Under the pieces are notes generated by a model that saw only the letters and a program-made list of their open reading frames with translations, did not search any database and had not been told where the DNA came from. Made by a program: the position numbers and the translations under genes. A stretch of DNA of 55,366 bases from Choristocarpus tenellus KU-1152 (taxonomy: Eukaryota > Protista > Phaeophyceae), in the NCBI GenBank assembly GCA_964200185.2, contig CAXNAD020000007.1, positions 1-55,366 on the forward strand, in the 5' to 3' direction. This document shows positions 26,001 to 47,900 of the stretch, piece after piece; position 1 is the stretch's first letter; every line of letters starts with the position of its first letter.

Positions 26001-27042
26001 AATACCCTTTATGAGGCCTTTTCCTACCTAGTCCCAAACATGAGAAAATTGACATGGACAACATTCATGGCTTCAGCATGTCGCTGAACCACCAAGAATG
26101 GAAGTGAGGGGTGGAAGGCAATATGGATAATAACCAGCGGTCAATACACTCATACGCTTTAATGCAAATTGGTACGTGATTACGTTGCATCCTACAGTTG
26201 TATCGTACAGATGGACGGAATACCGAAAGGCAATCAACAGAGCAAAAGAAGCAATATAGAAAAAATATATCAATTCCTCTTGTCTCTCATCTGAATACCA
26301 TTCCGACAAATTCGGCATCCATTATGAGAGTATTACATTCATGTTCACTCCAAGGACAGAATGACTCGAGCGAGTATGTAGAAATCTTGTCGTAAGAGAA
26401 AACGACAAGGCGTATTCCACATTATGAACAAAAAACGATTTCATTTTTAGCGGTCGAGTTACGCATAGAACTAGCAGTCTCATATACTCATTACAATGTT
26501 TTGTGCTAGCAGCACAGATCGAGGCACAGGAGGCAGGGGTACAGGGGTCTAAATGCAACTCGACTTGGAACCATGGCTTTACTGTGAAAGGGTGCCTGGC
26601 ATTGTCGATTGTACTACGTGTCTAAAATAAAACCCAGTCTGTTATCATCCAACCTAATGTGTTACACATAACCCCTCTACAAGATAGGAAGGCCAGGAAA
26701 GCAAGATGTCAGTCACTACGATAACATCATACTGACGGACTCGAGTGCCCTGTTGGAATAACTGCATATATATTGCAGTATAGACCAATCTCTAGGTCCA
26801 AGAGGTGACATGTATCCATAATATGACTCTCGTAGATATTGGAGTAACAGAGCATACAAATCATAACCTCAACTCGAAGATGCACACACCTGTTGCGCTG
26901 GATCCACACGACCACTTTTTGCCATCCCCGTTAAAGTCGACTCCAGGAACCGCTCCGCAAAGATAGTCCATACCATACATCGTGCTATACCAAAGATGCT
27001 TGGCTTTTTGAAAGATGGCGCAACAGCTTCCATCCCTCTCAT
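916..27042 (-). CDS. Phosphatidylinositol-4-phosphate 5-kinase (PIP5K family), multi-exon gene; variable-insert exons not fully resolved
   Basis: Hand-spliced exons in transcript order: 26890-27042 (or 26890-26980), 21745-21859 (or 21745-21918), 20467-20615, 18010-18137, 17197-17323, 16708-16875, 16135-16154, 15998-16031, [unresolved insert exons], 7031-7098, 916-1048. All have AG/GT ends and matching phases. The product carries PIP5K motifs in canonical order: FEEFAAPAFAHLKGLHGI, NSKSRQRFLFTEDGKYMLKS, LPEFAEHFAHNRGSLISRCYG, RYDLKGS, KDLD, MDYSLLYGAH, GIIDVLQRY, KDLETRVK, ISAVPPQEYKERF. Glu in the activation loop indicates type I (PI4P 5-kinase) specificity. Confidence 0.9.
2599..2621. repeat. 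(AT)n microsatellite
   Basis: direct. Confidence 0.9.
7031..7098 (-). CDS. PIP5K exon with the GIID motif
   Basis: catcag| acceptor, |gtgagt donor; AGIYMGKEPGVVVYAGIIDVLQ(R). Confidence 0.88.
9400..10650 (-). mobile_element. Decayed mariner-like (plant DD39D-type) transposase in a PIP5K intron
   Basis: HTH-like TIAEDLGISQITMFHHLK, then HGDKKWFY, YIMKVMFLAAVG, FDGKIEIW, IFVQQDGAKPH, QPANSPELNINNLGFFHSIKQL; interrupted by stops and frameshifts; no TIRs identified. Confidence 0.85.
11025..11070. repeat. Compound (AT)n(GT)n microsatellite
   Basis: direct. Confidence 0.9.
14340..14950 (+). mobile_element. Second, more decayed mariner-like transposase remnant
   Basis: DKKWF at 14403, VPKVMFL at ~14505, RDRKIDIWP at ~14570; same motif order as the 9.4-10.6 kb element, opposite strand. 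Confidence 0.65.
15998..16154 (-). CDS. PIP5K micro-exons 16135-16154 (20 nt) and 15998-16031 (34 nt)
   Basis: tttag|TATGGTGCACATTTGCTCTG|gtaagg followed by ctttcag|G GGA GGT...AAG|gtatga; gives DYSLL-YGAHLLWGGFYDVAYCDK with phases 0->2->0. Confidence 0.7.
16708..16875 (-). CDS. PIP5K exon with KDLD and the catalytic MDYSLL motif
   Basis: MMKDLDLEDISGD...LRADTEFLCRLKIMDYSLL; tgtacag| acceptor, |gtatga donor. Confidence 0.92.
17197..17323 (-). CDS. PIP5K exon with the DLKGS motif
   Basis: STIYMVFSNVFSTSRWVEERYDLKGSTIGRRASQTHSEKPTG; phase 2->0. Confidence 0.92.
18010..18137 (-). CDS. PIP5K N-lobe exon
   Basis: SEDELESLLCFLPEFAEHFAHNRGSLISRCYGAYRITDSRTN(R); phase 0->2. Confidence 0.88.
18440..20260 (-). 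mobile_element. Highly decayed Ty3/gypsy pol remnant (RNase H then integrase, possibly a chromodomain)
   Basis: Fragments in the expected order on the minus strand: EIYA..ALK..TNHENL (RH TDH-like), CAACDMC (integrase zinc CxxC), SVDLVMP (SMDF-like), DRxP, HPFFN (HPVFH-like); many stops. Confidence 0.45.
20467..20615 (-). CDS. PIP5K exon with the G-loop region and ATP-binding Lys
   Basis: (A)HLKGLHGISSETFCSSFREGSSFIELTPNSKSRQRFLFTEDGKYMLKSA; phase 1->0; this frame is not shown in the ORF track. Confidence 0.88.
21745..21918 (-). CDS. PIP5K N-terminal exon (acceptor at 21918 or 21859)
   Basis: ...LQVCLTEMCTSESNGSGEEESGHNGKENTFIFEEFAAPAF; |gtatgt donor, phase 1. Confidence 0.78.
23043..23080. 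repeat. Perfect 19-bp tandem duplication
   Basis: TGCTATGAAGAACGTTTCA x2. Confidence 0.9.
26890..27042 (-). CDS. Probable first coding exon of PIP5K
   Basis: CAG|gtgtgt donor at 26889. ATG 27042 (phase 0) splices in frame to acceptor 21859, and ATG 26980 (phase 1) splices in frame to acceptor 21918. No homology support from the sequence alone. Confidence 0.55.
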
Positions 27043-27470
27043 CTCTCCTCCAGAGTCTGTCAGTGTAGATAAGAGTGTAGTGGTAGTACTCAATGAATAG
27101 TTACCAAAAATGAGTAGAGAAAAAGGATTAAAATTAGAGTTAGGGAATAATATTCCGCGCGAATGTAGCGCGGGTGGACAACAGAATGAGAGGCGGTGAG
27201 GGAAAGGAAAAGTTGGTATCAGGTAAAGTGGAAGGTTTGCATAGGAGGAGACATATTGTCCAAATTTATAATCTCTCTCTGACGCGATCGTCCCTGAGCG
27301 CAGAAAGTCAAGTGCTAGGTTCTTGGATTGATTTCGTGCATTACTACCTTCAACTAGAAAGTTAGTAAGTAATCAAAAGTTATCATTAAAGGAGGCTTCC
27401 AACCCCGCGCAATTGTGTTGACGGGGATACTTGGGAAATCTTTGTGCGGTGAAGGGAAATAAGGAGAATT
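27043..27470. promoter_or_regulatory. Putative bidirectional promoter / 5' UTRs between divergent genes
   Basis: 428 bp between the opposed ATGs; several CGCG-type motifs cluster here, unlike the CpG-poor introns. Confidence 0.55.
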
Positions 27471-27601
27471 ATGGCCTATAATGCTGGAGCAATGCTTAAG
27501 AGATCTTTAGAGGATACCCCATATTCCGGCGGGTATACGGATTCATCGATGGACATGAAAAGGGCCAGACCGGATGGCATGACTTCTGGGATATATGGTG
27601 G
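27471..27601 (+). CDS. Exon 1 of the CCCH-Pin1 gene, with basic NLS-like motifs
   Basis: [43 protein letters not shown]; the GG|gtgtgc donor gives phase 2, matching exon 2. Confidence 0.78.
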
Positions 27602-30600
27602 GTGTGCTGTACCCATACCTACCACCGTCACTCGATGCTTACATCATCTCCTTTTGGAAACGTGAATGTTTTGAGATTCTAGGGCACTCTGATAATTTTA
27701 CTCTCTGCTTTGTAGTTGTTCTTTCGTCTTGGAGTTTCTTTCTCGCACCATCGGAGTTTAAAATATCTGGTATCTATTTCGTCATAGTGAACTGACTAGT
27801 GCTACTCAGTGTTGCGCGATATTTGCGATGCACTTTTGATCCAGGTTTGTTTATGGGTATGTTTTATTCAAGATTCATTTGAGGGTGAAGGAGGAAGGAA
27901 AATCAATTTTTGTTTTGAGAGTCCCGAAGCAATCCATAGTAGTCTTCTTTCATAACAATTTATGATGGCATATTCACTGCCTGAGGTATTTTCCCATCTT
28001 CCCCCCCCCTCGCACCTCTCCCTACACTTCCCTCTTTAGATGCGGCATAGAGAGGTTTGTTAGTTATCCTTGATTGCAGTTCGAGAGAAACAGTGCCAAG
28101 ATGGTAGGCCTGTACATGCCTTGCTTACTTCCTCCCCTAAATGCTTTCCTGCCGGTTGACACCGCTTCAATACTGTGAGTCCGTTTTTTTTACCCATTGG
28201 ACCCCATCTCCCTCTTACTCGTCATCGACCAAATGTTTGGTGTCGATTTACTGACTAAACAGGTTCCTCTGGAGCCACAGGCTCATCTGCCCCCATTGGA
28301 GTCACCCAGCCTTACCCTCGCCGCCCAGGAGCGGATGCGTGCAGCTTTTACTGGCAGACCGGAACATGCAAATTTGGCCTGAGTTGCCGGTGAGATTTGG
28401 AAGGAGAGAGATGGTGGAAAGGTTACCCCAACTTACCTGCCACAACTGAAACATATTTTATCCCTACAAATTTGTACCACAAGCATTGTCAAACCTCATC
28501 GCGGTATGAACAACTGCACAAAGTATCTTCAGATTCCCAGGTTGATAAGACTATCAGATGTTGGGTTCATTTGAAGGTCGGAGAGCAGATGTTCTATATA
28601 CAACTCAGAAACCTACCTGGGTTCATTAGGGGGTCCACAGTGAAAGGGGGATGGCATAATTACAGGGATATGGGATGTGATAGGGACTCATTACTACTAG
28701 AACTGGAAAGACAGTCTCTTGTGCTAGATACATTGAATATCTGCACTATCACTAGGCTGATCGCTTGAACACCTGTCCATGTGCAAGGTGGTTACCTGAA
28801 CTGCTTCTCCTCAATGGTCATCATATCTAATTTGTGCAACATATCCTCTTGATGACATTTTGTACATTTTCAATCTCCCAAGTCAATTCATTTTTTTCTT
28901 TTGAAACAGGGGTATCCCTAGATTCAACCTCATGAACACAATGTTTTAACGGCTCAGAAATATGTCTATACCGCATGCTATTTAAATATGAACAAAATGC
29001 CACAGCAAAAAAGTTGTAGCATGAGGCTGACGTCATGCAGAGATAGGCCTTTGACCTCATTTATTTCCATGTTCTATATCAGAGGTTCTTGAGATGTCAA
29101 TGTGTTTGTAGGCTTTTATACCAGGTTGGTGTTTCATCTCAGCATCAATGATGTGATGGATGGGTTAACATATGGATTTCCCACCATTTTGAGAGGATTT
29201 TTCTGTTAGGGAATTGTCAAATATTACCTTCTGTTACATAGTTTGCAGGGAGGCATGAATATATTCTCACTTGATGTGATCTAATTATCCATCTGATCAT
29301 TTGTGTTTACAATGAGCCTCTACAAGGTATGTGTCAACTATGCACAGGTGATTAGGTGTTACTGTGTTTATTTGTGGATTTCTCCTGTTACTGAGGTCTG
29401 AGGTGTTTCACCGTTTCTTGCTTCCTTGGCAAGTGCGTGCCTTCTGCTCTCTCAGATGTAGTTGACTGTTTTTTAATTTTCCTCTTTCCACTTGCTCTTT
29501 TCTTGCCCCCTTCGAGAAGTCTTGCGCACTCCCACTCTCCTCTATTCTGTGCCCACTCTAATTCCCCCTCTCTCGTTCCCTTTTTTCATGTCCTGCCCAT
29601 AAAACCCTTCCTAACCCTCTTGTCCACCCCTTGTAGGTATGATCACCCACCTGGAGCTGGAAGTGTTGCTACTTCTTCTGCCATGACTCAGCACTCAGGA
29701 GCTGTTCAGGGGACAGGAGCAAGCATATCGTCAACAGGTCAACAACCTGCCTATGCTACTGGGACCAGTGCAACAGCTGCAAACTCAGGTATTGGACAGA
29801 AGGCTGATAAAAGTGCACCTATTTCTGAGGTCCATCATGCCATGTGTAGGGTTATTGAGTAGCAGTTCTGTGTTCCAAGATTGCACTGACGTCCTTTTTT
29901 TATTGTTAGACCTTGTTTTTTAGATTTTTTGGTGGGATAGTAGACTACCAGGATATGTTCAAAGGGGGGGTGCGATGTTTAGTCTTATATATTTGGTCAT
30001 TTCACTGCTTCAAGTTACCAGAGATTGTGCTTTTGATGGGTGTAGACATGTTATGCTCCATATTTCTATTACGACTGCTCAGTCTGGTTGACTCTTTTTG
30101 ATAGTGTTTTGTTACGCGTAGATAGGTGAACAAAAAATGTCCTGTTAGGTATGTTTGATTGGTTACAACCTTCCTTGGTAGGAATTTTGTGCCATTATTG
30201 CTTTATGTAAATGTACATTTTGATTATTGTTATGATTTCTCGCCCATGAAAGAGGAGCAAATTCTTTTCATGGATGCTTGTACTTATTCATCATAAATAT
30301 GCTGAGCTCTCACAACAGAACTGGCACTTGCCTGATTGATGGTTGAATTATATTTTTGCAATTTCACTGGCGAATTTTGGGTGGTAATTCAAGAGATCAT
30401 ACAAACTCAGAGTTAGGTTAGGGTTAGGGTCCTATCATTTGAGAGAGACTGCCAAGCTTATTTAAAAGTCTACAACAAGGGTGTGTAGCAGACACAACTT
30501 TTAAATGTCAGGTGTAAGGAGTTCAATATATGCATGAAATTTATTCACCAAAATGCGCTTTGATTCCCCATTCTTGTTGATTACAAGTTAAAACGAGACA

Positions 30601-33600
30601 AAGACTGAGATGTAATCTCTGCTTTTGCTTGTAACTTTTGTAGCTTGGACTGCAGGAAAGCTCATGATTATCCAAAATCTGGTTTCTTAACTCCTGAAGG
30701 GTAGGGAGGATTTTGCCATGACTTACCTTGTGTCCAACAAAACTGCCCAATCTGAAAAAAAATGTTTTCTTTCATTATCAAAAGCATGCTCTATCTCACA
30801 TGTGGGATGTTTCGTGGTCTTTTGCCCTCACGTCCAAGGTTGCACACCTTGTGTGTATGTAGTTCGCTGAATCCAAGTAACATTTGTTTCCTGATATATG
30901 AAAAAATGTGGTTGGTGCCAAGACAACGTTTGGAAGTTTGTCTAACCAATAAATTAAAGTATTTTTTTGGGGGGGGAGGGTCTTCACCAGGGTATCCATT
31001 CGGTCCAAAATCAGGAATTGCACATTTTCATCATCCATCGGACGTATGCAACCAAATCACACAAAAATCACGACATAAAGAGATTGACCCCAAATGGACA
31101 GCAGCTGCCCCCCCCCCCCCCCCCCCCCCCCCCACCCCACTCNNNNNNNNNNAGCAAACAAAACACAACAAAAACACCACCCAAAAAGTTTGACCCCCAA
31201 AGGGCGCCCGCGCCCCCCCCCCCCCCCCAGACACTCTGAGCCAATTCCAGGACCCGCAATTTGATATATATGCCTGTTTCAGAACTGGATTAATACTTCC
31301 CCTTGTTTCCCCACGCCACAACCCTTTTTATCAGGTTCGTATGGTCAGCAGCAGCAGTACAGTCAGTCTGCTGTGGGGGCATCCTACGGAACTGCTGCTG
31401 TTCCCCCTGGCACTGACTATGGCACAACTGGCTCTACCTATCCCACAACTGGCTCTACCTATCCCACAACTGGCTCTACCTATCCCACAACTGGCTCTAC
31501 CTATCCCACAACTGGCTCTACCTATCCCACAACTGGCTCTGCCTATCCCACAACTGGTTCCACTGCATCCACAGGGGGGACTGGGGTATACAGTGCGCAT
31601 GCCCAAAGTGGATACTCCAACCCTGCTGAGAGCAGCTACAGTACACAGGCAACTGATGGAAGCTATGCTGCCCAACCATCTGTCGGCACTGGTATCTATA
31701 ATGGCCAGGGTCAGCATGTGTCTTCTACAGGGACAACAGGAGAAGCTGGAGCTGCTGGAAGTAGCTACACTATTTCCCAGCAGGCAGCTGGAAGTGGCAC
31801 ATATTCTGTTCCAAGCTACCCTACTAGCAGTTACTCATCACAGACAACTGGACCAGCCCCAGGGACTTCCAGCTATCCCGCATCTTCAACTCAAGTTGGT
31901 GGTACTCCTACTGGAGTTGGGGCAACACCCCAACAGGTGGGAGCTAGTAGTTATACTGCAGCTTCGGCACCACAGCAGGCAGGGGCAGCAGATGCTTCAA
32001 CTGCTGGTGCCAGCGTCAGAGCATATGGGGTTGCCACCTCAACCAGTGGCTACCCTATGCAGGCTACAGGTTCAGTCAGTGCTGTAGGTTACCCTGGCTC
32101 AGGTACAGCGCCGTCCAGCACTTATCCTGGGGCTGGGGTGGCGGCTCTGTCTTCTGATGGGACATCAGGAAGTAGAGGGTTCCATCAGCAGCATGGGGTC
32201 TCCACTGGCTATGATGGTAGTGTGTCAGGTACCAATGGCTTAAATAGGGGAGCTGCAGCGCAAGATAGTGCTCGCAATGGTTCTGCGGCAGCAGTGGGTT
32301 CCACTGCATCTGCTTCTGGTCTTCCTCAAGGACAGTTGTCGCAGCAGGGATCGATGCAGCCTGGGTATGGTGTTGTACAGCAGGGTTATGCAGGCTATAT
32401 TAGTGGTTCAGGTGGACAGCAAGCACAACAGGTGGGTTTTGTGGAATGTTGAAAGGGGAGGGATAGAAGAAGTTCCCCTCTCACAGAGTGTGATGTATCC
32501 TTTTGTCAGAGTCAAGATCATCAATCATACTGTCATCCACATCATGATGTGTTAGGCAGGTATCGCAACACCTATTTTTTTGTGTTTTACAGTGAAGGGA
32601 AGTTTTCCAAGTTCATTCAGTCTTCACCTTATTCGATTTATGAAACAGTGAGGGTTTTTTTCATCTTGGATAGGGGGTCAATGTATCTCCTGTATTTTCA
32701 ATTCTGCTTGCTATTTTTTGCAAGGACTGTAATACTTGTTTCACTGAGCATTTGTGGTGCCCCTTAACAAAATAATATAAACAGTGCGAACATAGAAGTA
32801 CTAGAATTCAATAAATAGTAAATTACAATGAGGTTTGGGAATTCTTAGGAGTACTTGAAAAAATTTTATGACCCTTGTTGAACCTACTTGTTAACACACG
32901 CTTTATGGAATTGTCAGGCATCAACTTACACGAATGGCTACGGTCCACAGGCTCAGACAAGCACTGGAGGTCAAGGTATGCAGTAGATAGAAGTAAAACA
33001 ATTTTTTGGGTGGGTGTAAGCACTATTTTGAATGCATTTTAGAAGGAAAATCACACAACTATACAGAAAGCATCTTACTGCACCAGTGTCAAGCACTATA
33101 ACTTGGAAGAGTTTAGTCGTTTGTATTCTCTGTTTCCAGAATTGAGAATACTATTCAAGAGCCATTACTAAAATTTAAACATAACCTTAGTAAATCTTGC
33201 ATTGAAGTATGTCATCTGACAAAGTAATATTAGACATCTTATTCTGTGGTTGGTAAGCTGTGTGAAAACACAGTTGTGGGAGGGTTTTGTACATCTTATC
33301 GACTTGAATTGATACATCACTACTCTATGCAAAATATATTGTGACTGATTATTTAAAGCTAGGACAAAATGAAAATATTGATCTTACTTTAAAGGCTTGG
33401 TCAAATAGTGATGCCAAATATGAGAAAAGGGAATTTTATCCAACCTTTAGAGTGGCGTTGACTCTCCATCAACAGGGTATCCTCTTAGTATGCTCTTTGC
33501 TTGGTAACAACCACAGTCCAAAAATGTAATACGTGACTTTGACTGTCACAGCCTCCATAGTTGGTATTGTTAAAATCTGCCCTCAGCAGTCACCCTCACC

Positions 33601-34650
33601 TCCATCCCACTCTTCCCTTATTGTTTACATCCTCTTGCCCTGTTTGTTGCATACGTCTTGGTATTAAAGCTTCCCAGTCATCCACTTCAGACCTTGCAGG
33701 TGCTGCAGCTGCATATGCTGCTCAGCAACGCGGCCAGCAGCCCCCATCCAATGTCACATCGTCTACTATGCAGGTAAATGTGGTTTGCTTGATTCTCCCA
33801 ATCTGAGTAAGTTGTAATTGTATATGGCATTTGGATGATTGTTGTAGTTTACTTCAAAGGGTCAAAAGTTTCAACTTTGCAGGACTGGTACCATAATTAC
33901 TTGACAAAATCTCCAGTTCCCTAAGTCCTCGTCTCAAGTTATCAGAGAGAAATATGTAGGATTACGTCAAACTGTACAATTACACTAATTTCCCACATAC
34001 AACCAAGTCACAACCAGTAGCAATAAATTGATCTTTTTTGGCAATGAGTGATGAGGAGATGTACTCTGAGGAAGCATAGAATTAATATTCTTATTTTTCA
34101 ATGCTTGCACCCATTTTTTCACTGCATTATATTTTTTGCAATGGCAATGGGACTGACAAGTAAAGAATCTATCCTATTTGGTTTAGCTGGCGAATCACTG
34201 AACTCCTAATTCTTAGTTTTTCCCCTCAAAGTAATTGTTTTGCAGATTGCATTGTTCTTTGTAGGGTACTGAACCTGAAATTTTGTCCAATAAATCTACT
34301 ATATCAATTTTCTTCTGTTAAGGTAATGGTGCTTCAAGTCATGTGCATATAAACTGTTATTGTATGCAGATTATTTTACTGTACATGGCGAGTGTTGTTT
34401 TAGTGATTTGACTCATGGCCAAGAGTGAAAGCCTACCATTATACTAGTAGTATTTGTTCAAAAAGCATAGTCCTTGGTGAAAAGAGGTAGGAGTTTGAGG
34501 CAACAAGAATACAGAGGCACGAGTCAGCAATGTCGGTGTGAGTGCTGGTCTTTACCCTATGGAATGAATAGCTAGTAGAATTTTGAACTAGGGTGATGGT
34601 TCTGTAGGTGTAAATAGAAAGTTATCTTTATGATAGGCAAAAAAACAGAC

Positions 34651-34701
<51 letters not shown>

Positions 34702-37700
34702 TAGGACATGACATGTTTAGTGGTTTTGAGTGCATTTCTGCTTCAACACATGTCTCTTTAGCTTTTTATTCAAAGGATGTCTGCTCATCAATATGCCTTC
34801 TCATATATACCTCAATTTCTTAATAGATACCGGGCTCTAGCAATGGAGCTGCAGACCAATACAGCTCAACAACAGGCCAACCTTCGTCCTCCCACCAATC
34901 AGACCCCCAAGGTGCCCCTCAAGGGCAGGCAAGCGGACAGGTAATTTGTGGGACAGAAGAGGATGAGATTAAATATTTATATTGTCTGCTTCTGGAAAAT
35001 GGGTTCATAAACACTCTTAATTGAGGGTAGCCAGATGCTACCTCTTTTTTTAATTTATGGAAAATATTGGAAAATGTGTTCACATTCATTTTTACATGTA
35101 TTTCCCAACACCAACTGCAATCACCACCTACTCCATATATCACTTCAATTTAGTTGCTATACCTCTCTTACCACTTTGTCCTCTTTGCCATGTTGAAAAT
35201 TTACCATTTCAGTCCACAGTTCTGCTCTCTGCCATCAACACCGCAATCAGAAATATTTCCCCCTTTCCAGTGTTCTTTCAAGATGCTCTATTTATGGGTT
35301 ATGTTTAAACCACTGTATATTGTTCTCAGCTAGAAGTCTGGTGTCCTCCGGTTTGTTCTTTTGATCCTTGAATTCAATCACAAGACAGAAAATTCTAGTT
35401 ATTTTCTCTTCAGTGTTGCACCACTTCTACCCCCCGATTGTTTTTTTTGTTCCTTCCACACTACCTTAAATGACTTGTTTGAAATTCTTGCCTTGGTTAT
35501 AATTTCTCCTTGCATATTAATGCCTCAAGAGTGTTTATGCTTCATACTTTAGTTCCTATTTTCTGTGTTCTTTTTTTGCGAATCTTATGTTCAACTCTGG
35601 ACAGTGAGAATTATGAAAAGGCTTACTTGGGCAAATTTTCTAGTCAATGGTATGGTACAACAACATATCCCCACTTCAATCTGAAAAACCTGTTTTTGGT
35701 TCATGCAGTACGCTGGCAGTTATGGATCACAATCTCAACACCAACCGAGTCCCTTTGGAGCACCCCCCTCCTCTCAGCAGAGCAGTGGCGCGGTGAGTAT
35801 AAAAAATATATATATTTTTGACTTTTATTATAATGTACTAGTCTGTGTTCTGTTGAAAGTTCTTGGTTTGTGTTTCTGCTTTTTATGAGTTTTGAAGAAG
35901 AGCTTCACCTATGTCTTCAAGAAATGTGCAGAGTTGAAGCGGATCAAAATTTTCTCATAAATCATCTTAGTGCACATCATGGCTTTAAGGTCCTCCAGTT
36001 TTGTGTAGAATAATAAGCACACTATGAGTAACCAGTATTCTACTTGTGTCGTGTATTATTTGTCAATTGAGGCATAGTGATGACCCCTGTCGAAAGTTAG
36101 GATTGCCCCGTGTGAAGAGCAAGAAATTCAGGTTTAGAAGCAATGTTGTCAGTTGAGTGCTTATAGAACCCTTGACTAACTCATTACACACATTACCTTG
36201 TCTGCCGACATTTCCCTGATGTTTAAGTAGTATTCTCATAATGGTACTGACTGGACAACATCAGACATTGAAAAAAGGAAAAAAAACAAAACACTTCCTT
36301 GTACATGCGGAGACATTGGCGATGGGCTAAGCCCTCCATCATATCCTTGTCAGTCTTTTGTGCCAAATTTGTGCAAGGAGAACCCTAACGTATGTTGTCT
36401 ACTGTGTAATGTTTGAGGAAAACCATTTCTATGTTTTGATTCGCATGATCAATAAAGAAACTCCAATAGAACATTGTTTCATAACTGTTCGATTCCTTGG
36501 TAGCTTCGTCTAAGAGTTTTTTACCTTCAAGGAAGGTTCTGGGCTGGAGGTTGCTAGGTTTTCAGGGTATAAGGGGTAGATTTTCTATCAAAACCTCAGA
36601 CTGGGCTGGTCACCATTGTAATGCTAAATTACGATGAATCTGAAGAGAACCATTAATCTGAGATCTGGGGGGTAGGACGCATTTTTATTGGTGTTTTTTG
36701 AGAGAGATACCTGACCAGGTTAAGTACAGTACGACAAAGGGCTGATCACCCAATAAATTATATGTTTTGCTCAAAATTACGATCTTATTCTTTTTCTTAT
36801 ACCCATACTCCTTAGCAACCTTCTACTGAGAATCTTCCTTGAAACAAAAAATTCTAAGATGAAAGGTACAAAGAAATCAAAAGGTGACAACTAAAAAGTG
36901 TAGATAATTATGAAAAAAACTCCTGATTTTTAGCCAAAAACAGTCCACCTCTTTCGGACCACATGTCTGAAACTTGAATCTCCTATCTGAATGCTATTCC
37001 ACAAATCCAAAAACTTGCAACATAAAATATAGCAACTCACACAGTCCTGTTTCTCTCACACACAATATGCAATAGGGTGGGCAAGATGAAATGGGTTTTT
37101 TATTGTTGAAATTGTAACTCCTACGTTCTTAATTGTGTCACAAATGTTTTAACATGGAGAGTAGGTGACCAGTCAATACAATTCATCTCAGACACAGTGG
37201 GGGCCCCGGCATGGAGGACAGGGTCAGGCTCAATCAGCATCTCCACATGGTGGATACGATCAGTACAATACCAACTCTTCGTACCCTGGAGGTGTGAGTC
37301 TGCCCTGTGCGTTTCTGTTGCAAGATATATTTTGACTTTGTCTCTAGAGCTACAACCGAGATTTGAAGTTTTACTTGCCTTGGAATGTGCTTTCTAAATG
37401 CATTTTTAAAATCTGCCAATGCTATGAATGGAATTTTGTAAAGGTTGAGGGTCTAGATTTTTGACAAGCTGTCCCTGCTGCGGCTAAATTATTGGTAGTA
37501 GCTAACTTGGTTTTTGTCTACACTTTTTTTGTAAACTTTTCCAGCTTCTCTCACATAGAGGTAATTTGACTTTTTACTCAGTTTTGTCCTTCCTGGTATT
37601 GTGTGATGGTTGGCATTGTGTAAGTGATTGAGGCATGCTCTTTTTTCACCATCTTCTCACATGAATAATATCATGTCTCAATTAAATCGTGATAGGTCTG

Positions 37701-40700
37701 TGACTTCCCTCTCCATTTTTGCATTACTTGGGTTTTGTTTTTGGCTTCCCACCTTTGAAGCTCTTTTCTCAGCTCCTTCCTCTTCCCCAGCACCTGCATC
37801 TGGGCCTGGTTACGCCTACAACAGCAGAGGTGCTGCTGCAGGAGGTGCAAGCATGGCAAGGTGTGCAAGATCTGTAGGTTTATCTAATGATAATGTTCCT
37901 TTTGTAAGCTACAGATATCAGGGGGTTTTTCATCTGAGTTTTTCCTGTTGCGTCATCAACATCAAAAACTCCTGAGCCTGTTCATGTGTACTCATCAATA
38001 TGTAAAAATTTGTTTTCACATAGGCGTAAGCGTAGAGTTCATGTTAAATGTATATGCCCATGGGTGGATATCAGGCAGTCTTGTCGTGACGCAGTATTTG
38101 AAACTGGATGTTCTTGCTCTCTGTCAGGGCAAAAAACTGAACCAAGGAATCATATATTGGTGGTGCTTGCGTTTGAAGATACCCTCCTGAGTGCCATGTC
38201 AGGACTGATAATGTACTTGACAAAGTTTTCACATCAACGTCCCACCCTTAAATATCTGATATCTGACTCAAATTTCTGTACAATATTGTGGTACAAGCAA
38301 ACATTAGAGAAATCTTATCTTTGCTCTCACAATGCTCTTTGCATTTCACTGGTATGGTGACTTTGAACTATTTTTATTTGCTACATAGAATAAAGGACTC
38401 CAAATAGTATGGTGCATCTCATCAAAGAATATGTTGGGTCATTGAGGTGTAATCTCTACTGGATAAGTCACTAATCCCAGAGCAGGTCACCACTTTAGTA
38501 CCCTGTGCCTCATATTCATGCTCTTATTATCTGTTTTTAACTTTGCACACTTCTAAGTCACTATTTTGTCGACCCATCATGCCACATATTCCAATACAGG
38601 CCGAACCCCACAGGGTGGCGCAATGGAGGTACAAACAGTGATGCCCTTGGCATGGGTAGGTCTGGTAGTGGAGTGAGCAGCAGTGGCTCAAATACCAATA
38701 TTGGCGGTCCATACGGCCCAGGGCCAAGGGGAGACCTAGCTCGGCGTATGGATATGCCCATTGGTGCCCGGGCAACTGGTGGCGGGAGCAATGGGATGGG
38801 TTTGGGTCCTCGTCAAGATACTCCTTACTCCTCTGGAGCTAATGCTGGTATGGTCGGTATGGGGGGAAGTCCATCGAATATGTCGACCTCAGCAAGGAAT
38901 CCTCTTGGGGGTCCAAAAGTTCAACAACCAGGGATGCCGCAGCGTCCTGGCATGCCGGAGTGTGCCTACTTCATGAAGACTGGGGCTTGCCGATTTGCTT
39001 TATCCTGCAAGTAAGTTTTGGATTTAGTTCAAGCTTGTTAGTCTTGGGTGATGAATCAGTTACCATTTTCTAGTATAGCATAGTGGTCTGTAGTGATACT
39101 CATCACTGTCAATAAAAGTGATAGCAATAGTAGATTTTTTGGTGACATAGATCCAGGTTATCCATTCTCTTTTGTTGTTGTATTTGCTGTAAAGATGGAC
39201 ATTTTTTTATGATAGTAATTTTCTTGGTTTAGATAGAAGGCTATTCAAGTTGTGTCCGTTGTCTTGCGATTTAAAACCCTTGTTAATAGGCTCATTTTTT
39301 ATGTATTTCTCATTAAGGGCTCTTCCTAACAAAACTCAACGCAACACAATTTTGTGAAATTGTAGATGAAAAAGACGACCTGGAACAGATTTATTTCCAG
39401 TACTTTTATGTAAGATGCAAATTTTACGCTCTTTGTGGGGCGTTCGTTTAGATGATTTGCCTTGAAAAGGTTGAGATAATTTTACTGCTTGTAGAAATTG
39501 CTCGAGGACATTTTTTATCAAACTTGTCCTTCAGCTTCAAAAGTCATTAATTTGGTAAGAGAAAAATGAGGAAGATGGTGCTAGAAGTCATCATGGAGTA
39601 GGCAGAAATGCTTGTTCAGAAAATTGCTATATTCTTGTGGCAGAATCTTTGATGTGACTATTTTGGTGACAATAGTTTTAAACTGACTGAACAGATTTTT
39701 AGTTACCGTATATGTTTGTGGTGTGCAGAGTAAGGGATACAAATCGTTTAGTGACCATGGAATGATGCAGATATATTCCTACAAAGTGCATAGCAAAATA
39801 GACTTCAGAATGTAACCAGTTGAATCTGATCCATGGATATGTCACTGTAATTCTAGAAATATAAGTGTTATATTTCACTTAAGTGCTGAGCTCATCAGTC
39901 AAAACCTGACACTAATATATATTTTTTCGATGTCCTTGGTATTCCTGATTTGCTACTCGTCAAGGTTCCACCATCCCTATGAACTTCGTCCCAACCCTAC
40001 TCCAGCAGCCCAACGCAGCTCTTCGGTTGTAAGCAGTCAAGAAAGGGCTCCGTGCGACACATATCTGGAGGTGAGAAAGAAGAAAATAGGGTGGTAGGTA
40101 AACTCTACGAGGTAAGTTAAAGATATTAACAATCTCAGGAGATAATACCAAATTATCCCTCTCTTTAAGCATGAGTAACAGTTTTTTCTTCGAATCTTGT
40201 TTGGGCATTTTACACAGGTAACAGTCCTGACTGCAAAATTTGTTGATGGCCTTGGAAAATGAAACAAGGCTGTAAATGATCAGATAATCCCTCTGTGACT
40301 AGGTCTGGTAAAGATTAATTTCATTTTACTGTGCTTGTTTTGGGGTAACGGTTGAAAACTAGACTATTCTATTTGAGGCCTTCCACGAATAGAAGAAATT
40401 GATGTTTTTAATAGGGCAAGACCTGAAATGTTTGTTCTAATAATTGCTCTGACTCGCTCTGGAGCTCAAGGTGCCTAGACTATGTGATCTGATCCCATGC
40501 AACCTTGAAGCCGTGGTTTATGCAGAATATTTTTCTGTCATCGCCCTTCACATACCGATTTTGTTTGGAAAAGGATGTGATATTATTCAGAAATGGTACC
40601 TGAAACGTTTCATTAATGATGTTACTCACAATCATTGCGGTAATCAACAGGACAATTGTTTCACTGTCCAATGCCCAATTTTTGTAGTTACTCACTTGAT

Positions 40701-43700
40701 TGTGGGTGTTGTATTGCCTAGAATTTTCCGTAACAGTTTCCAATGAAAGTCGAAAGAACATGGAAACAAGTCCCTTAAGATATTTTGTGGGTTTTCCTGT
40801 ATTAAATTATCACTGTACATCAGCCATTTATATGTTGTTGTTACAATCATCAGTGAGGGCAAGGTTCATTCTCTCTGAACTCAGGACAAGTCTTAATGAG
40901 GAAGTTTGGTTGATGTGAAACAAGCTACTCCAGAGAATGGCGGAGGAGAAGAATTGGACATCTACTTTAGAATTGTTCTATTTTATTAGGGTCTTGTCAT
41001 CAATCAACCCTTCGTACTTGTTTCGTCTCAAATAAGATAGGATGTGATGAGGTCAGAGAATGCATATTTTACCTGCAAGCATCAGTGCACAATGGGATGG
41101 TTTTCTCTTCATGTTACTTCTCATTACGCCCAACAAATACTCATATTTTCCGTTTACATTGGGTACTTTCATGAAGGGTGAGGGTTAGGGTAACACGAAG
41201 AATAGCATGTGTACAGCATGGTTTTTTGTCCAATTTCAAGTTCTGGAACATGGGGCAACAGTATTTTTGCAACAGAGGTGATAAATAGAATTGCAGGGCA
41301 AAGAAAGGTCTGCAGTGGTAATATTATGCGCACTGATGATTTTGGTCTAATATTTTTTGCTAAGATGATTCATTCTTGTCCCTTTGGATATGTTAGATAT
41401 TACGAGGACAGGTGTTGTCTGCGCTGTTGACTGTTTTGTCTATTTCCTTTTTAGATTGTACTGACACAATAAAGACAATCTTGGACTTGCCTTGTCTTTT
41501 CTGTGCTAACCTCCTACTTGCAGTCGGGGGTGTGCAACTTTGGAGATAAGTGCCGCTTCCGCCATGCCAGCAAGGCTCAACTTGAGGAGGTGATGAATAG
41601 AGTTGCACAAAATGCGTACATAACTAAAAAGTTGTGAAAACCAGGAACTTGCTTGTGGCTTACATTCTGAATTCTTAGTATTGCCTATTTGAAGTTAGAC
41701 GTTTTGATGTGTAAAACACTGAGGTTACCTCATGTTCCTCATTAACCTTCCACATTGTTGTACACCATCCGGCTGTAGATGAGGTTAATCTTGTGTGGTT
41801 TGCCTCTATTGCACCAATATTTGATTTCAGCCATCTTTTGCTATTACTCCCCAGGAACAAGCGATGGGCTTCAGGCACCCTGATCCCAATGATCTTCCCT
41901 CGCGTCCTGGAATGGATCCATGCAAGTTTTATGCTCGTACTGGTGAGAAGAGGAATTTCTGGTAAACCAATTGCACTTGATAGTGGGTCAAAATAATACT
42001 GCTCTAGATTTTTTACAAGGAAATTCCTTTTGATGTCATATTTAACTTATTCTCCAGCTCAACGATATATTAGCCGTACTTATATTCGCATTTTATGTCC
42101 ACTTCAGGCTAAAAGGACCTCAATATTTTGCCAATGTTTACCTAGGTATTTGAAATTTTGTAATTTTATTGGAGCTCAACATCAATATAATAGTAGATTA
42201 GTTTGGTAGGTGCAAGTTCGAATATTGCTTAGCATAACCTCAAGTGATACATGACATTGCACAAAATTGGCAGGGAAGTGTGCGTTTGGCATGAAGTGCA
42301 AGTTTGACCACCCTGAGCACCTGAAGGCAGCTGCTGCCAACATGGCAAGGACGGTGAGTAATGTGGGCGCTACCAAGGTATAGATAGTAAGGGGGGAGGG
42401 CTAATGTGATCAGAAAACATATTTCTGCTTCGTATAGTTTTTGTTCCTTCTGCTAGTGGGAGTGCGTGCATTGGAAAAGTGAGTGATACAGAGAATAGAT
42501 TGCAATGTCTTTTGAGTCTACCACATTATCTGGAGGTGACCCCTCTGTAAAGATTAATTGAGGTCTTTTCAAAGTATGACTGCTTTTAATGATAAGGTTT
42601 GTAGTGACAGCCCTAACATACCATACAACCTACTGCATGTGCAGGATAATAGAACAAGAGTGATTATTACAGAGACTTTAAGGAGATGTGATGGGTGGCC
42701 TTACCCCTATTTTCCAGTCTGCAATTCGATGTTTTAACGGCACAAACTCTACCTTGCTGTTATTTTTTTATGACCTTTCCTGTCTTCTGCATGGTCAATT
42801 GGCTGTGAGTAGGGCCTTGCATCAAGTGCCTCGTCAACAATGCCTGGGGAAAATCGGATGGTAGCATCTGGCTCATCACTGTCCTCTCACGCGCCAGAGC
42901 AGACTGGGAGCAACAAGAAGTCACCCACTCCCCTGAGCACCAGCGTTCCACAGCAGCGTAAGGTACTGCTGCAAACAAGATTTATGCTCAGGGTGCTACT
43001 TTTGTAAATAGGGCTGCGCGTGCAGAATGTCATTGGATTACTTGAGGTAGAGGTGAATGTACATGTCAATAAAAAGTCTACCATCGACTATTTTTAACAT
43101 TGTGGTCTCATTTTGTGATAAACCATCCAAGATAATAACAATTTGACCGAAGTAAATGATCTCATGGACACAGGTACGTGTTCTGATTGGTCTCAACAAG
43201 AGCAGTTGAGCTCATAGTTCAAGTCTTGAAGCATTGCCACATAATTATTCAGTACATACTTTATATGACAGTGATGAAATTTGTTTCATTTGACAATACC
43301 TTGCACAGGCAGCAACATCTGACCTCAAAGAGGTATATGCTCGCCACATTCTGATCAAGCACAAGGGGTCGCGCCGCCCAGCATCATGGAAAGACCCTGA
43401 GGGAGCCATGATCAAGCAGAGGTAGCAACTGCAAAGTAGAAGGACAAAAGGCTGCTGATGGGCCTATGTTTTTTTTCGTTTCTGATTGTCTCATGCTGAT
43501 AGTCACACTTAGAGCATGTGTAGTTTGTGAACTATGTGTAAAAAGTTGCTGGAAGTGGCAATTTTGTCATATGCTCCTGTCAAGGTTGTGCTACAAAATT
43601 GATTTGATAGTTGTATTGTGCCTTACAGAAGAAAAACTGATGTCTTTTTCAAAACCTTTGATTAGTCTGTTATTCCCTCGCATGCAAGTCCTGACTGCAC

Positions 43701-44926
43701 ACCCTCCCTAACCCTTGATTGGTATGTAATTGCACTTATGGGTCACGATTTTACTTCTGTGCCTTTGTATTTTAAGGACTGGATTATAAAAAAATATTTA
43801 TTTTCTGATCCCTTTTAGCTTGCAGTGTCTAAATGCAGCTCGTTGTTTCTACCAAAGGCTTTACTATGTGTGCTTGTACAGAGTGAAGTAAGCATGAACC
43901 CACTGCAAGGTCTGCATTGGTCACCCACCCATCCCCACCCCACCCCTCAATAGACGCACATACATGAAGCTTGTCTTACTCTGATGACAACTGGATAAAT
44001 AAATATTTGTAATGTGGACTGTAAAAACAGGACTGTGGAAGAAGCAACAAGGATGTTGAGAGACCTGAGGGAAAGTGTCAAGTCACCTGATGATTTTGCC
44101 AAAGTGGCTACCACAAGCTCTGACTGCAGCAGTGCCAAGAGGGGAGGAGATCTTGGCTCATTTGTGCGAGGAAAGATGCAGGTGAACACTATTTTATTAT
44201 TTTTGTATGATACGGACGATGTTCCACATATGTTTGGCAAGTAATGATAGGGTTCAGGGGAGTTCTATTATCCAAGGATAAATTAAGCACGTAATTACCT
44301 TTTGTTTTTTGGGTTCTTCGTGTTTTAGACCCTAACACCTGTAGAAATTATTTTTTTGGTCATCAGTTGGTTGGATATGTTTATTTGACTTACTAAAAAT
44401 AAATTATTTATTAAACCACTACATTTTATTGGACCAATCCTAGTCATAATTGCTGTCCCCAGGCAACATGACAGTTTAATGGTATTCCTTGGATGCATAT
44501 TAAGACCGAGAATAGAAATTATGTTCTCATAGTTAACTCAGAATAAAATCTTATAAAAAAATTAAATTAGATGTTGGGTAGCAGCTAATGCGACTTGATG
44601 GTATAGATGAAGACATAATTGTCCTTTCAGATTTTAGTCCAGTAGGTTTTCTAAGTTATCATATAAGTATCTTATCCGGGTTGACTTTTGGAGTATCAGC
44701 ATAATTTCATACCTCTCTTACAGGATGGCACTACAGTTGTGCTGTTAAGTATGAAAATAATGTTGAGGTACCCACAAGTAACGCCTTCTTATCCTTAACT
44801 GTTCTAACTATTTTATTAATAACGCAGCGGGCCTTCGAAGATGCGGCATTTGGACTGGCCGTGGGGGGTCTCAGCGATGTGGTTGCCACAGACAGTGGTG
44901 TGCACCTTATCATGCGCACTGGCTGA
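27471..44926 (+). CDS. Low-complexity/prion-like region + 3x CCCH zinc finger + Pin1-type parvulin peptidyl-prolyl cis-trans isomerase fusion protein (~1040 aa, 17 exons)
   Basis: Exons: 27471-27601, 29637-29788, 31335-32431, 33678-33773, 34827-34940, 35709-35792, 37192(or 37198)-37291, 37773(or 37791)-37860, 38600-39010, 39965-40070, 41524-41589, 41855-41942, 42274-42353, 42813-42962, 43309-43421, 44031-44181, 44828-44926. All are GT-AG and phase-compatible, giving one open frame of 3126 nt with the longer acceptors. Confidence 0.85.
31143..31152. other. Assembly gap (10 N) flanked by poly-C tracts, in intron 2 of the CCCH-Pin1 gene
   Basis: Ns are present; the two flanks look like low-quality duplicate reads of the same sequence. 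Confidence 0.9.
31335..32431 (+). CDS. Large G/S/T/A/Q/Y low-complexity exon 3 of the CCCH-Pin1 gene
   Basis: 1097-nt open exon (ORF 31373..32452 frame); tttttatcag| acceptor, CAG|gtgggt donor. Confidence 0.88.
31418..31564 (+). repeat. Coding 21-bp tandem repeat x7 encoding YPTTGST heptads
   Basis: Unit TATCCCACAACTGGCTCTACC; YGTTGST (YPTTGST)4 [14 protein letters not shown]. Confidence 0.95.
34654..34701. repeat. Compound (CT)n(CA)n microsatellite
   Basis: direct. Confidence 0.9.
38600..42353 (+). CDS. Exons 9-13: three C-x8-C-x5-C-x3-H zinc fingers (plant HUA1/ZFN-like)
   Basis: ZF1 [29 protein letters not shown]; ZF2 [20 protein letters not shown]; ZF3 [30 protein letters not shown]. 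Each finger is completed only across a predicted splice junction. Confidence 0.92.
43309..44926 (+). CDS. Exons 15-17: Pin1/Ess1-type parvulin PPIase domain (plant Pin1At-like, no WW domain)
   Basis: [24 protein letters not shown]...[15 protein letters not shown]...[53 protein letters not shown]. It retains the K/R/R phosphate-binding triad, catalytic Cys, both His and the plant-type DPEG insertion. Confidence 0.95.
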
Positions 44927-47900
44927 ATCAAAAAACAATCTCACACATTGTTAAAATATTACAAGACATGACAGTCAACATGCCATTTGTCTTATGGGCA
45001 ATACTCAAGGGTGCCTGCAATGAGAGGGCTGGCAGTGATGAAGATTGAAGGGTTAGAAATGAAGTTCCAGTCAAGGGGAAGGAAAGGATGTGGGAAGGGC
45101 GATGTTAGGCTTGTAACTACAGACAAGGCGAGACAGGACAAGCGTCTGACGGAGAATAATGGAGTAGGGCATCTGTATCATGAACACCTGCATTTGACAT
45201 GGATTGGATTTTTCTTGGCTTGAGGAAGGCCTACAAAGTCTATATGCTTTATCAGGATTGTTCTAAAGGAGATTCAGTGAAGTTAAGAAAGGAGGGGTTT
45301 GGGGATATAGGGAGAAGGGCAAAGACCGAAAAGCACAAGACTAAACTTATCTGAATGAAGGCTATTGACCTTTTGGGTTGCGATTTACAGATTATGTTAT
45401 CGTTAAAAAGAGGATCAAATGGAATGTGGAATGCCTTATTTTGTTAAAGGGGTTGTGGTTTGAGGATTAAGTGGGGGGTAATAGTAGCTAGCTGGAGCTA
45501 TGTATTGGGTTGCAGAGCAGGGCTTGATATAACAAGCTAAATGGTGCACAAGACTTTATATTTGAAAAAAACAGTACACTCCAAGAATTCACAAAGGTGC
45601 AGAGCACACAACTGCAGACCCCAATTGATTTTGTGGGATAATCGTTTCATACTAAGTTATGTTACTTTGCTGATACCCAGGTTACGACATGAGTTCACAT
45701 TAGGTAGTAGGGGGGAGTGGTTAATGAAAATGAGTGATGGGGTTATGGTAAAGGGAAAAAGAAACATGCAGTGGTTTGTCATTCCTGTAAAGGGAATATG
45801 TTGGGCTTCGTGTCATCTTATGATATTTGAACTACATAAAGTTGAGTCATCATGTGAAGATGCTACCTTCCTTGTACATGGCATCGCTATGCTCCACAGG
45901 ACATTCCATGCCCAATATATTGGGTACATATGATAGGTGTGGTGAAGTTGACCAGGGGATCTTACGTGTGTATGAACTTGGCTTAAGTTGACTGGCATAA
46001 GGGTATGCACTATTCCAGGTAGCCCAGTGTGCGTAGGCACACATTTAATATATAGTCATCATGCTACACTTGAGAAAGCTATGTGGAACCTTTGCTGGGA
46101 CCGGAATTACATTTTGCAATAGCTTGTTGCAAACCCCGGTTCCCGGTTACCCTAATTCTTTGTTCAATTCATGGGTATTATCTGGAACATTTGTGAGGCA
46201 AAAGAGTCTTGTTATTGTAGAATTAAAGATTCTGTTCCTCGGTGTGTTAGTGCTGGAGGCTGAGTCCATTTTATGGTAGGTAGAGATGCTTTCAGTGTGC
46301 TGATGTGATTGTGAAGTAGGATGCAAGAAACAACCTACTCTTACAGCAAGACCTTCTGCACGCCTGCATTTTGTTGGATAATAATAAATATCAATACTGC
46401 ATTTTGTTAGAGGTGCTCCTTACTGCAGTGCACACTTCTCTCTTCTTTATAAATTGCAGTCTAGGGTATGCGGACTATTTTCTTCAAAACTATGTGTTGT
46501 GCAGGGCAGTAAGTTGCACCTTCATATCTTGACAAAATAGCAGACATGATGTGTTGTCCAGCTGTAGAGGAGACAGGAAGGTGTGCAAGAATGAATTTCC
46601 AGTATCTAAACAGAGCCAGCAGTGAACTCCTGGTTTATTGGGCTTGACTTTATCATTGGCCTCTTCAAAAGTCCATCATGGTGTGGTAAACTGCTTGGGC
46701 CCAGAATTTGTGATAAAGGATAATGTTTGTGTCATGTCATCATCTTTATTGTTCAAGATGAGGTGAGGGATATGAACAGCAGCATGTAAAAGGTTGTGTC
46801 TACATATTTTTTAGTTAGGAACTTTTATAAAACATGAGATTTGAAATCCTTGCTTTGTTTGCTCAAATTCATTACATGCGGTATCAACACTGTATTAGTT
46901 TCAAATGTTGAATTTCTCAGGAAAAGACATCCTCAAACTTGGACTAGTAGAATACCCTGTGTTTTGTTGCCCAAAATGGGGCAATGCAGGTGATTTTATT
47001 GTGACAGACCTTGTGTGGGCCTTAGATCTGCCCGCTCAGATGCCTCAAAAGATAAATAAAGTTGAAATATATTATCTGTGTGCATACTGCAGACTGAAGA
47101 GCTGCTATTAACTGTGTGCTAATGGTTGTGCTACTTTTGATTCTACCCTAAATGCCAGACAGGTTAAGAAAACACGATTTTTTTCATCATAAAAAAAGGA
47201 TTCTTTTTGTTGATAAATTGCTTGTGTATAACTTTCAAATACAGTCCACTTTTATTCTGTCGAGATCATAAAGCATGCAATAGTAAGTGATGAGAAATCA
47301 TATTACATGAAATGGTTTGTGCATGAAGTATATAGAATTTGAAGGAACAAATGTAACTTAAGTAGGTGATAATCAGGAAATCTATCGAACTCCGACCCAA
47401 GAACTACCTATCAGATCATTTATTTCTAACAATTACATTACCTATCTTTCACCTCTTCTTTCTGTTTTTCAAAATGTGGGCTGGGGTCTGTCACGTTTGT
47501 AGGATGCCTGCGCCAAACAAGAACTGCCCTCTTTCTGCATCTTGTTTTACCCTTCCCATTGCTACATTCATCTTCAGTCAGCAGATCATCCAGAAAGAAT
47601 GCGCACTTACCAAATTCTACGACTTGCTACAATCTTTCCATCGCTCTGAGGGGTCTTGGCTGGACTGTCCCAGGGCAAATGAGTACTTCTTCGTTAGCAG
47701 TGGAGGAGTTAATGTTCGTGACACGAGGATGTTACATTAAGGGAAAAGAAAATTGTGCCATTTCATGGGTAGTCAGTATAGTAGTCATACTCTCCGCCTT
47801 TACTTTTCCCTATTCTTGTGCTCTCCTCTTGTCTCAGGTGATTGTCATTGTGCCCACAATCTGGAATTTGCTGATGTTGCTTTGGCTTACTCATCTTCGT

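What the first reader, a model, noticed from the sequence alone, without database searches (positions are those of the whole stretch)
27471..44926. One gene fusing a prion-like region, three CCCH RNA-binding zinc fingers and a Pin1-type phospho-specific prolyl isomerase
Seen: 17 phase-compatible GT-AG exons give one ~1040-aa ORF. ZF3 (ending in exon 42274-42353) is joined through a phase-0 linker exon (42813-42962) to a complete parvulin domain. The first parvulin exon has an in-frame TGA 18 nt upstream and no ATG of its own, so it needs an upstream exon. The two intervening introns are only 459 and 346 bp and contain no assembly gap. Established: animal/fungal Pin1/Ess1 use a WW domain for targeting; plant Pin1At is a free ~120-aa catalytic domain with a DPEG insertion; HUA1/ZFN-type CCCH proteins are nuclear RNA-binding/processing factors. 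I do not recall a described CCCH-parvulin fusion. Inference: CCCH fingers replace the WW module, giving an RNA-tethered pSer/Thr-Pro isomerase that could act on Pol II CTD or on splicing/3'-processing factors on specific transcripts.
Basis: partly seen in the sequence, partly recalled or inferred. Interest (0 to 1): 0.9.

Follow-up and report, generated by a model that had tools for sequence, protein, structure and literature searches.

The report
Zinc-finger-fused Pin1 enzyme in brown algae
Brown algae and their relatives carry a conserved gene, for which I found no description, that joins RNA-binding-type zinc fingers to a Pin1-like phosphorylation-dependent prolyl isomerase, which suggests an enzyme brought to its protein targets by RNA instead of by the usual WW module.

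Summary
The window matches a contig of the brown alga Choristocarpus tenellus (same length; public product CAM9103390.1). The gene has 19 GT-AG exons and encodes 1117 aa: four CCCH fingers (not three), a 717-aa Gly/Ser/Ala/Thr/Gln/Pro/Tyr low-complexity region, and a complete Pin1At-type parvulin with all catalytic and phosphate-binding residues. One RNA-like contig splices exons 1-4 across the assembly gap, so the gap lies in an intron. I did not read the finger-to-parvulin junction directly. It is supported by the public model, by Ectocarpus orthologues (six introns at identical positions), by Scytosiphon (same exons, shared PIP5K neighbour), by finger exons found upstream of a parvulin fragment where the tree predicted them, and by two unplaced eukaryotes with finger and parvulin in one uninterrupted ORF. 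Fused parvulins form one supported clade carrying the four-residue insertion of WW-less plant enzymes, so fingers were more likely added to a WW-less enzyme than swapped for WW. The genome also has a free Pin1-type paralogue; no WW-Pin1 was found. No paper describing this architecture was found. RNA binding, activity and targets are inferred, not shown.

The parts
27301..27470 (+). 5' UTR (at least this long)
   Evidence: X3 contig starts at 27301; no upstream ATG in 27301-27470
27471..27597 (+). exon 1: start codon and two KR motifs (putative nuclear localisation signal, inferred)
   Evidence: spliced in X3; homologous first exon in Scytosiphon L038; missing from the public model
28263..28389 (+). 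exon 2: most of CCCH finger 1 (finger spans 28340-29646)
   Evidence: Pfam zf-CCCH E=9e-5; joints on both sides in X3
29637..29788 (+). exon 3: end of finger 1, start of the low-complexity region
   Evidence: public model P0442 starts at a Met inside this exon
29789..31334 (+). intron 3, holding a high-copy repeat with poly-C and the N gap at 31143-31152
   Evidence: skipped as one 1546-nt GT..AG intron in X3
31335..32431 (+). exon 4: low-complexity region with a 21-nt tandem repeat (six Tyr-Pro-Thr-Thr-Gly-Ser heptads, about 31424-31558)
32918..37860 (+). exons 5-10 (32918-32975, 33670-33773, 34827-34940, 35709-35792, 37165-37291, 37761-37860): rest of the Gln/Ser/Gly/Tyr-rich region
   Evidence: phase-consistent and identical to the public model; 4>5 joint and the 33670 acceptor seen in X3
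38600..39010 (+). exon 11: Gly/Met-rich stretch and start of finger 2 (38961-39974)
   Evidence: Pfam; Ectocarpus intron at the same codon and phase
39965..42353 (+). exons 12-15 (39965-40070, 41524-41589, 41855-41942, 42274-42353): fingers 2, 3 (40053-41565) and 4 (41921-42311)
   Evidence: orthologous exons in L013, L014, L018, L038, L040
42813..42962 (+). exon 16: phase-0 Ser-rich linker
   Evidence: exact in public model P0442 aa 841-890; low pLDDT
43309..44926 (+). exons 17-19 (43309-43421, 44031-44181, 44828-44926): Pin1-type parvulin, aa about 1005-1117; His1010, Lys1014, Arg1019, Arg1020, DPEG 1026-1029, Cys1067, His1111; TGA ends at 44926
   Evidence: best PDB hit 1j6y (Pin1At) E=3e-39; Foldseek to human Pin1 E=7e-12; residue map

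Best explanation
This is a conserved ochrophyte gene (brown algae, probably a xanthophyte, and unplaced relatives) for a multi-CCCH, low-complexity protein ending in an intact Pin1At-type parvulin. SHOWN: one spliced gene across the gap; four fingers; intact active-site and phosphate-loop residues; conserved fusion. INFERRED mechanism: (1) N-terminal KR motifs take it to the nucleus; (2) the three tandem fingers, with their Phe/Tyr stacking positions, bind single-stranded nascent or processing RNA; (3) the nearly uncharged low-complexity region concentrates it in RNP condensates; (4) the flexibly linked parvulin isomerises pSer/pThr-Pro bonds of proteins on that RNA, such as the Pol II CTD or splicing and 3'-end factors, and so gates their dephosphorylation or exchange. 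The four-residue insertion would supply WW-independent phospho-recognition and the fingers supply location. The free paralogue on contig C3558 would cover untethered substrates.
For: Gene model and gap. Public joined model CAM9103390.1 with exons 5-19 identical to mine. Ectocarpus cluster of 11 sequences, five of which carry fingers and parvulin together; of the 8 introns, 6 are at identical codon and phase and 2 linker introns are also phase 0. Scytosiphon exons and PIP5K synteny. Finger and parvulin in one uninterrupted ORF in L012/L015 and L016. Starred clade (96/80) of fused parvulins; its unlabelled member P0082 proved to have finger exons 2.3-3.3 kb upstream, while free-clade loci L039 and L011 had none. 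Catalytic residues. Precedents: Pin1 acts in 3' processing via Ssu72 (PMC7229847); HUA1 is a nuclear CCCH protein that binds the CTD phosphatase CPL1 (PMC5785034); AtCyp59 couples RNA binding to PPIase activity (PMC3561992).
Against: No biochemical or localisation data. The finger-parvulin junction was not read in this species' RNA. No canonical CTD heptads or RPB1 C-terminus could be found in this fragmented assembly. TbPar42 keeps the whole basic cluster yet its FHA-truncated form showed no activity on the test peptide (PMC3416822), so residues do not prove catalysis. Finger number varies (4, 3, 4, 1) and finger 1 was not found in Scytosiphon. The model shows no fixed finger-parvulin contact (pTM 0.37, four-sequence alignment).
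Confidence: 0.55

Rival explanations
1. Same protein, but it works in the cytoplasm: a TTP-like mRNP or granule protein whose parvulin remodels phosphorylated decay or translation factors.
For: Closest solved finger structures include tristetraprolin and butyrate response factor 2 tandem fingers (E=4e-5 to 3e-4); 717-aa low-complexity region with 4.6% charged residues and 44 Tyr; WW-less TbPin1 is cytoplasmic (PMC3416822).
Against: Fingers match plant five-finger C3H proteins much better; N-terminal KR motifs are conserved in Scytosiphon and L015.
Confidence: 0.2
2. The parvulin acts mainly as a phospho-Ser/Thr-Pro binding or scaffold module with little catalysis; the protein is an RNA-binding adaptor.
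For: TbPar42 precedent (PMC3416822); a free paralogue could supply bulk activity.
Against: His59, Lys63, Arg68, Cys113, Leu122, Met130, Phe134, Ser154 and His157 equivalents are invariant in the four aligned lineages.
Confidence: 0.13
3. The fingers bind protein or DNA rather than RNA, so targeting is not RNA-based.
For: Own knowledge: some CCCH fingers mediate protein contacts. The helix after finger 3 is conserved and could be a protein interface.
Against: Aromatic base-stacking positions are kept in all four fingers; best family matches are RNA-binding types.
Confidence: 0.08
4. Two adjacent genes (a CCCH gene and a parvulin gene starting at a Met in exon 16) merged by annotation.
For: Junction not read directly; exon 16 has Met codons; an AATAAA lies in intron 16 at 43068; several public models are split.
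Against: No stop or AATAAA-type signal between finger 4 and exon 16; single-ORF fusions in L015 and L016; conserved order and intron phases in Ectocarpus and Scytosiphon; finger exons upstream of the parvulin in L040.
Confidence: 0.04

Closest known systems
Arabidopsis Pin1At (PDB 1j6y) and plant single-domain Pin1s
   Same: Best PDB sequence hit (E=3e-39); same DPEG four-residue insertion, basic cluster and Cys; no WW (PMC8716364).
   Different: Pin1At is a free domain of about 120 aa; here it ends a 1117-aa protein with four CCCH fingers. The free brown-algal paralogue on C3558 is the architectural match to Pin1At.
Human Pin1 / yeast Ess1 (WW-parvulin); TbPar42 and TcPar45 (FHA-parvulin)
   Same: N-terminal targeting module plus C-terminal Pin1-type catalytic domain; same fold.
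   Different: WW and FHA read phosphopeptides; here the extra module is a CCCH cluster. The WW and FHA enzymes sampled lack the insertion and fall outside this clade.
AtCyp59 / Rct1 RRM-cyclophilins; FKBP25
   Same: Closest in how it would work: a prolyl isomerase joined to an RNA-binding module, linked to Pol II CTD phosphorylation (PMC3561992; FKBP25 PMC5714180, abstract only).
   Different: Unrelated catalytic folds, not phospho-specific parvulins; RRM or helix bundle instead of CCCH.
Plant multi-finger C3H proteins (HUA1/ZFN type)
   Same: Pro-x-Arg-Pro-Gly lead-in fingers; three-finger block collinear with a lettuce five-finger protein (E=1e-22); finger blocks split by a low-complexity spacer.
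   Different: 1+3 rather than 3+2 arrangement, far longer spacer, and no enzyme domain in the plant proteins. Orthology to HUA1 itself was not tested.

Membership tests
Pin1-type parvulin | Rotamase/PpiC domain and fold | tested here: met
   Pfam 71 bits; Foldseek E=7e-12, rmsd about 2.3 A to human Pin1
Pin1-type parvulin | basic phosphate-binding cluster Lys63/Arg68/Arg69 | tested here: met
   Lys1014, Arg1019, Arg1020; the Arg69 position is Asn or Lys in distant members, as in TbPin1
Pin1-type parvulin | Cys113, His59, His157, Ser154, Leu122, Met130, Phe134 | tested here: met
Pin1-type parvulin | phospho-dependent isomerase activity; ess1 complementation | not testable with these tools
   TbPar42 shows that sequence alone is not sufficient (PMC3416822)
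WW-Pin1/Ess1 class | N-terminal WW domain | tested here: not met
   no WW in Pfam scan of P0442; no WW match on contig C7
Plant single-domain Pin1At class | four-residue insertion after the phosphate loop | tested here: met
   DPEG at aa 1026-1029
Plant single-domain Pin1At class | protein made of the catalytic domain alone | tested here: not met
   about 1000 aa N-terminal extension with fingers
CCCH zinc finger proteins | C-x8-C-x5-C-x3-H motifs with aromatic positions | tested here: met
   four motifs; Pfam PF00642
HUA1/ZFN-type C3H subfamily | five or six fingers, no enzyme domain, orthology to plant members | tested here: inconclusive
   finger similarity E=1e-22, but number and arrangement differ and no finger tree was built
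CCCH zinc finger proteins | RNA binding | not testable with these tools
   inferred from family
Prion-like low-complexity domain | polar, uncharged, Gln/Asn/Ser/Gly/Tyr-rich composition | tested here: inconclusive
   54% QNSGY, 4.6% charged, 44 Tyr, but also rich in Ala/Thr/Pro; no PLAAC-type score run

The most novel reading that the evidence does not exclude
Brown algae and their PX-clade relatives lack the WW-type Pin1 found in diatoms and oomycetes, and run the Ess1/Pin1 step of the Pol II CTD cycle with an RNA-tethered enzyme. Nascent RNA sequence would then choose where phospho-proline isomerisation happens, a transcript-selective route into the CTD code.
Probability: 0.25. Interest if true: 0.85.

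Novelty: new variant of a known kind. Interest (0 to 1): 0.64.

Why it matters
Described Pin1-type enzymes have a WW domain, an FHA domain or no targeting domain. A conserved CCCH-finger class would add targeting by RNA to phospho-specific prolyl isomerisation, something so far shown for cyclophilins and FKBP25, which are not phospho-specific. It occurs in Ectocarpus, the genetic model for an independent origin of complex multicellularity, so it can be tested directly. It has probably been missed because public gene models split it into fragments or leave it unnamed.

Tried and rejected
My joined spliced model was never sent to a search tool. Searches used single exons by reference or database proteins by id (P0442 is the public product of this locus); the joined translation was used only in scripts to check frame, compare with P0442 and number residues. 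One search was a frame slip and was not repeated in that form. A metagenome contig scan gave 19 loci and no further fusion (intron-rich genes escape the patterns). Atlas searches by features and by shape showed no CCCH+Rotamase cluster of 50 or more members; this does not show rarity. Literature searches for CCCH+parvulin, parvulin architectures, brown-algal Pin1 and the Phaeoexplorer preprint's main text gave no description; supplements and subscription journals were not searched. RPB1 CTD searches failed. L015 and L016 could not be placed (a 37-aa Chrysoreinhardia SAR1 fragment is too weak). Rejected: plant origin; a break at the gap; a recent duplication of the free paralogue, which has different intron positions and sits on a separate branch (my first notebook entry had this wrong and was corrected). 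The search of earlier findings returned nothing.
Full report
Observation. Reading 27000-46000 and testing splice phases gave a stop-free model of 19 exons from ATG 27471 to TGA 44926, all introns GT-AG. With three upstream acceptors taken from the public model it encodes 1117 aa. It has four C-x8-C-x5-C-x3-H fingers (aa 69-88, 818-837, 864-883, 914-933), a 717-aa low-complexity region (83% Gly/Ser/Ala/Thr/Gln/Pro/Tyr, 4.6% charged), a linker exon and a parvulin at about aa 1005-1117. Exon-by-exon Pfam scans support the fingers and the Rotamase domain.

The gap. The N run lies in intron 3, inside a high-copy repeat with poly-C. Of three runs holding the region, X3 has no kind on record but behaves as RNA: depth about 400-770 on exons and 0-8 in introns. 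One X3 contig splices exon 1 to 2 to 3 to 4, skipping 665, 1247 and 1546 nt with GT..AG ends, the last across the gap; another joins exons 4 and 5. The two sides are therefore one transcript, in frame. This used my only read-laying run, so the finger-to-parvulin junctions were not read directly. All three runs come from one study, possibly the source of the assembly.

Identity. A length-shifted parvulin search returned P0442, CAM9103390.1 of Choristocarpus tenellus, on a contig of exactly 55366 nt, with zf-CCCH and Rotamase domains. It equals my model except that it lacks the first 100 aa (exons 1-2 and finger 1) and one 7-aa repeat. Its exon-6 acceptor matches a loose end in X3, which suggests it was RNA-guided (inference). 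The host is a brown alga, not a plant.

Conservation. Ectocarpus proteins P0167, P0287-P0291 carry fingers and parvulin in the same order. Of eight introns in this part, six fall at the same codon and phase as in the window and the two linker introns are also phase 0. Scytosiphon has the same exons, a homologous exon 1 and a PIP5K gene upstream on the opposite strand, as the window does; finger 1 was not found there. A compact-genome eukaryote (L012/L015) has four fingers and the parvulin, with finger 4 and the parvulin in one uninterrupted ORF. Another (L016) has one finger and the parvulin in a 655-aa ORF. These show the architecture without any splicing assumption; their lineages could not be placed.

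Origin. In a 51-row tree of parvulin domains (118 columns, bootstrap not fully settled) the four fused domains and P0082 form one starred group (96/80) inside a weaker group (92/85) of insertion-bearing enzymes that includes plant Pin1s and the free paralogue; WW and FHA enzymes lie outside. The tree predicted fingers upstream of P0082, and they were there, 2.3-3.3 kb away (L040, GCA_017506865.1; I recall this assembly as the xanthophyte Tribonema minus, not verified). The free-clade loci L039 (8 kb upstream) and L011 (1.3 kb) had none. Forcing the fused domains together with diatom and oomycete WW-Pin1 cost 25 log-likelihood units but was not rejected (p=0.10). Addition of fingers to a WW-less enzyme is favoured by the shared insertion; it is not proven.

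Paralogues. Searches of this genome with three exons, with Pfam Rotamase and with an oomycete WW-type domain found only two Pin1-type genes: this one and a free 115-aa gene on C3558 with its own ATG and different introns. The assembly has 27,310 contigs, so the absence of WW-Pin1 is suggestive only.

Catalytic domain. The best PDB sequence match is Pin1At (E=3e-39), then human Pin1 and Ess1. The predicted model matches Pin1 structures. Equivalents of His59, Lys63, Arg68, Arg69, Cys113, Leu122, Met130, Phe134, Ser154 and His157 are all present, plus the DPEG insertion proposed to stand in for WW in plant enzymes (PMC8716364). The linker is predicted disordered and the domains independent. TbPar42 shows that such residues do not guarantee activity (PMC3416822).

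Mechanism. Best reading (0.55): a nuclear RNP-associated, RNA-tethered phospho-Ser/Thr-Pro isomerase acting on the Pol II CTD or on splicing and 3'-end factors. The fingers resemble plant multi-finger C3H proteins, the group that includes the nuclear HUA1, which binds CTD phosphatase CPL1 (PMC5785034; placing HUA1 in this finger type is from my own knowledge). Fission yeast Pin1 promotes 3' processing through Ssu72 (PMC7229847), and AtCyp59 shows that RNA can regulate a PPIase (PMC3561992). All functional steps are inference. The CTD could not be found in this assembly. Rivals: cytoplasmic mRNP regulator (0.2), non-catalytic phospho-reader (0.13), non-RNA fingers (0.08), two merged genes (0.04).

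Novelty. Papers on parvulin architectures that I read list WW, FHA, free, and one WW+Suf form (PMC11357558, PMC3416822). No CCCH form was found in my searches, and large Atlas clusters show only WW, FHA and free eukaryotic forms. The architecture is visible in unnamed public proteins, so it is undescribed as far as I could search, not unrecorded. It is a new variant of a known enzyme family with known functional analogues. Verdict: real and conserved; interest 0.64.

Limits. Distribution is a lower bound: the word-index searches are length-limited and many algal models are split.

Noticed in passing
window 16705-18395, minus strand: PIP5K exons (Pfam PF01504); the same gene lies upstream on the opposite strand in Scytosiphon L038, a conserved head-to-head pair.
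   Followed up: partly
G000:C3558 (L011 1324-2257, +): Free 115-aa Pin1-type gene with DPDG insertion and SDCGS motif; groups with P0079 and with tandem parvulins such as P0018 from a cluster that includes a Picozoa protein.
   Followed up: yes
window about 31424-31558: Near-perfect 21-nt tandem repeat encoding six Tyr-led heptads. The period is CTD-like but there is no Ser-Pro; the public model has one copy fewer.
   Followed up: partly
window about 30969-31220: Very high-copy repeat with poly-C tracts in intron 3 (summed contig depth above 100,000 in X1); it causes the assembly gap.
   Followed up: no
window 9400-9918, minus strand: Weak DDE_3 transposase-like ORF (E=0.01), probably a transposon remnant.
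   Followed up: no
L040 5821-6550: Several degenerate, stop-containing copies of the finger-4 exon downstream of the intact one.
   Followed up: no
proteins P0329, P0343, P0351-P0353, P0448, P0450: Proteins of 300-480 aa with both a cyclophilin (PF00160) and a Pin1-type parvulin domain: two unrelated isomerases fused; origin unknown.
   Followed up: no
L013, L017/L038, L018, L040: Public gene models split this gene into several fragments in Ectocarpus, Scytosiphon and GCA_017506865.1, hiding the architecture.
   Followed up: yes
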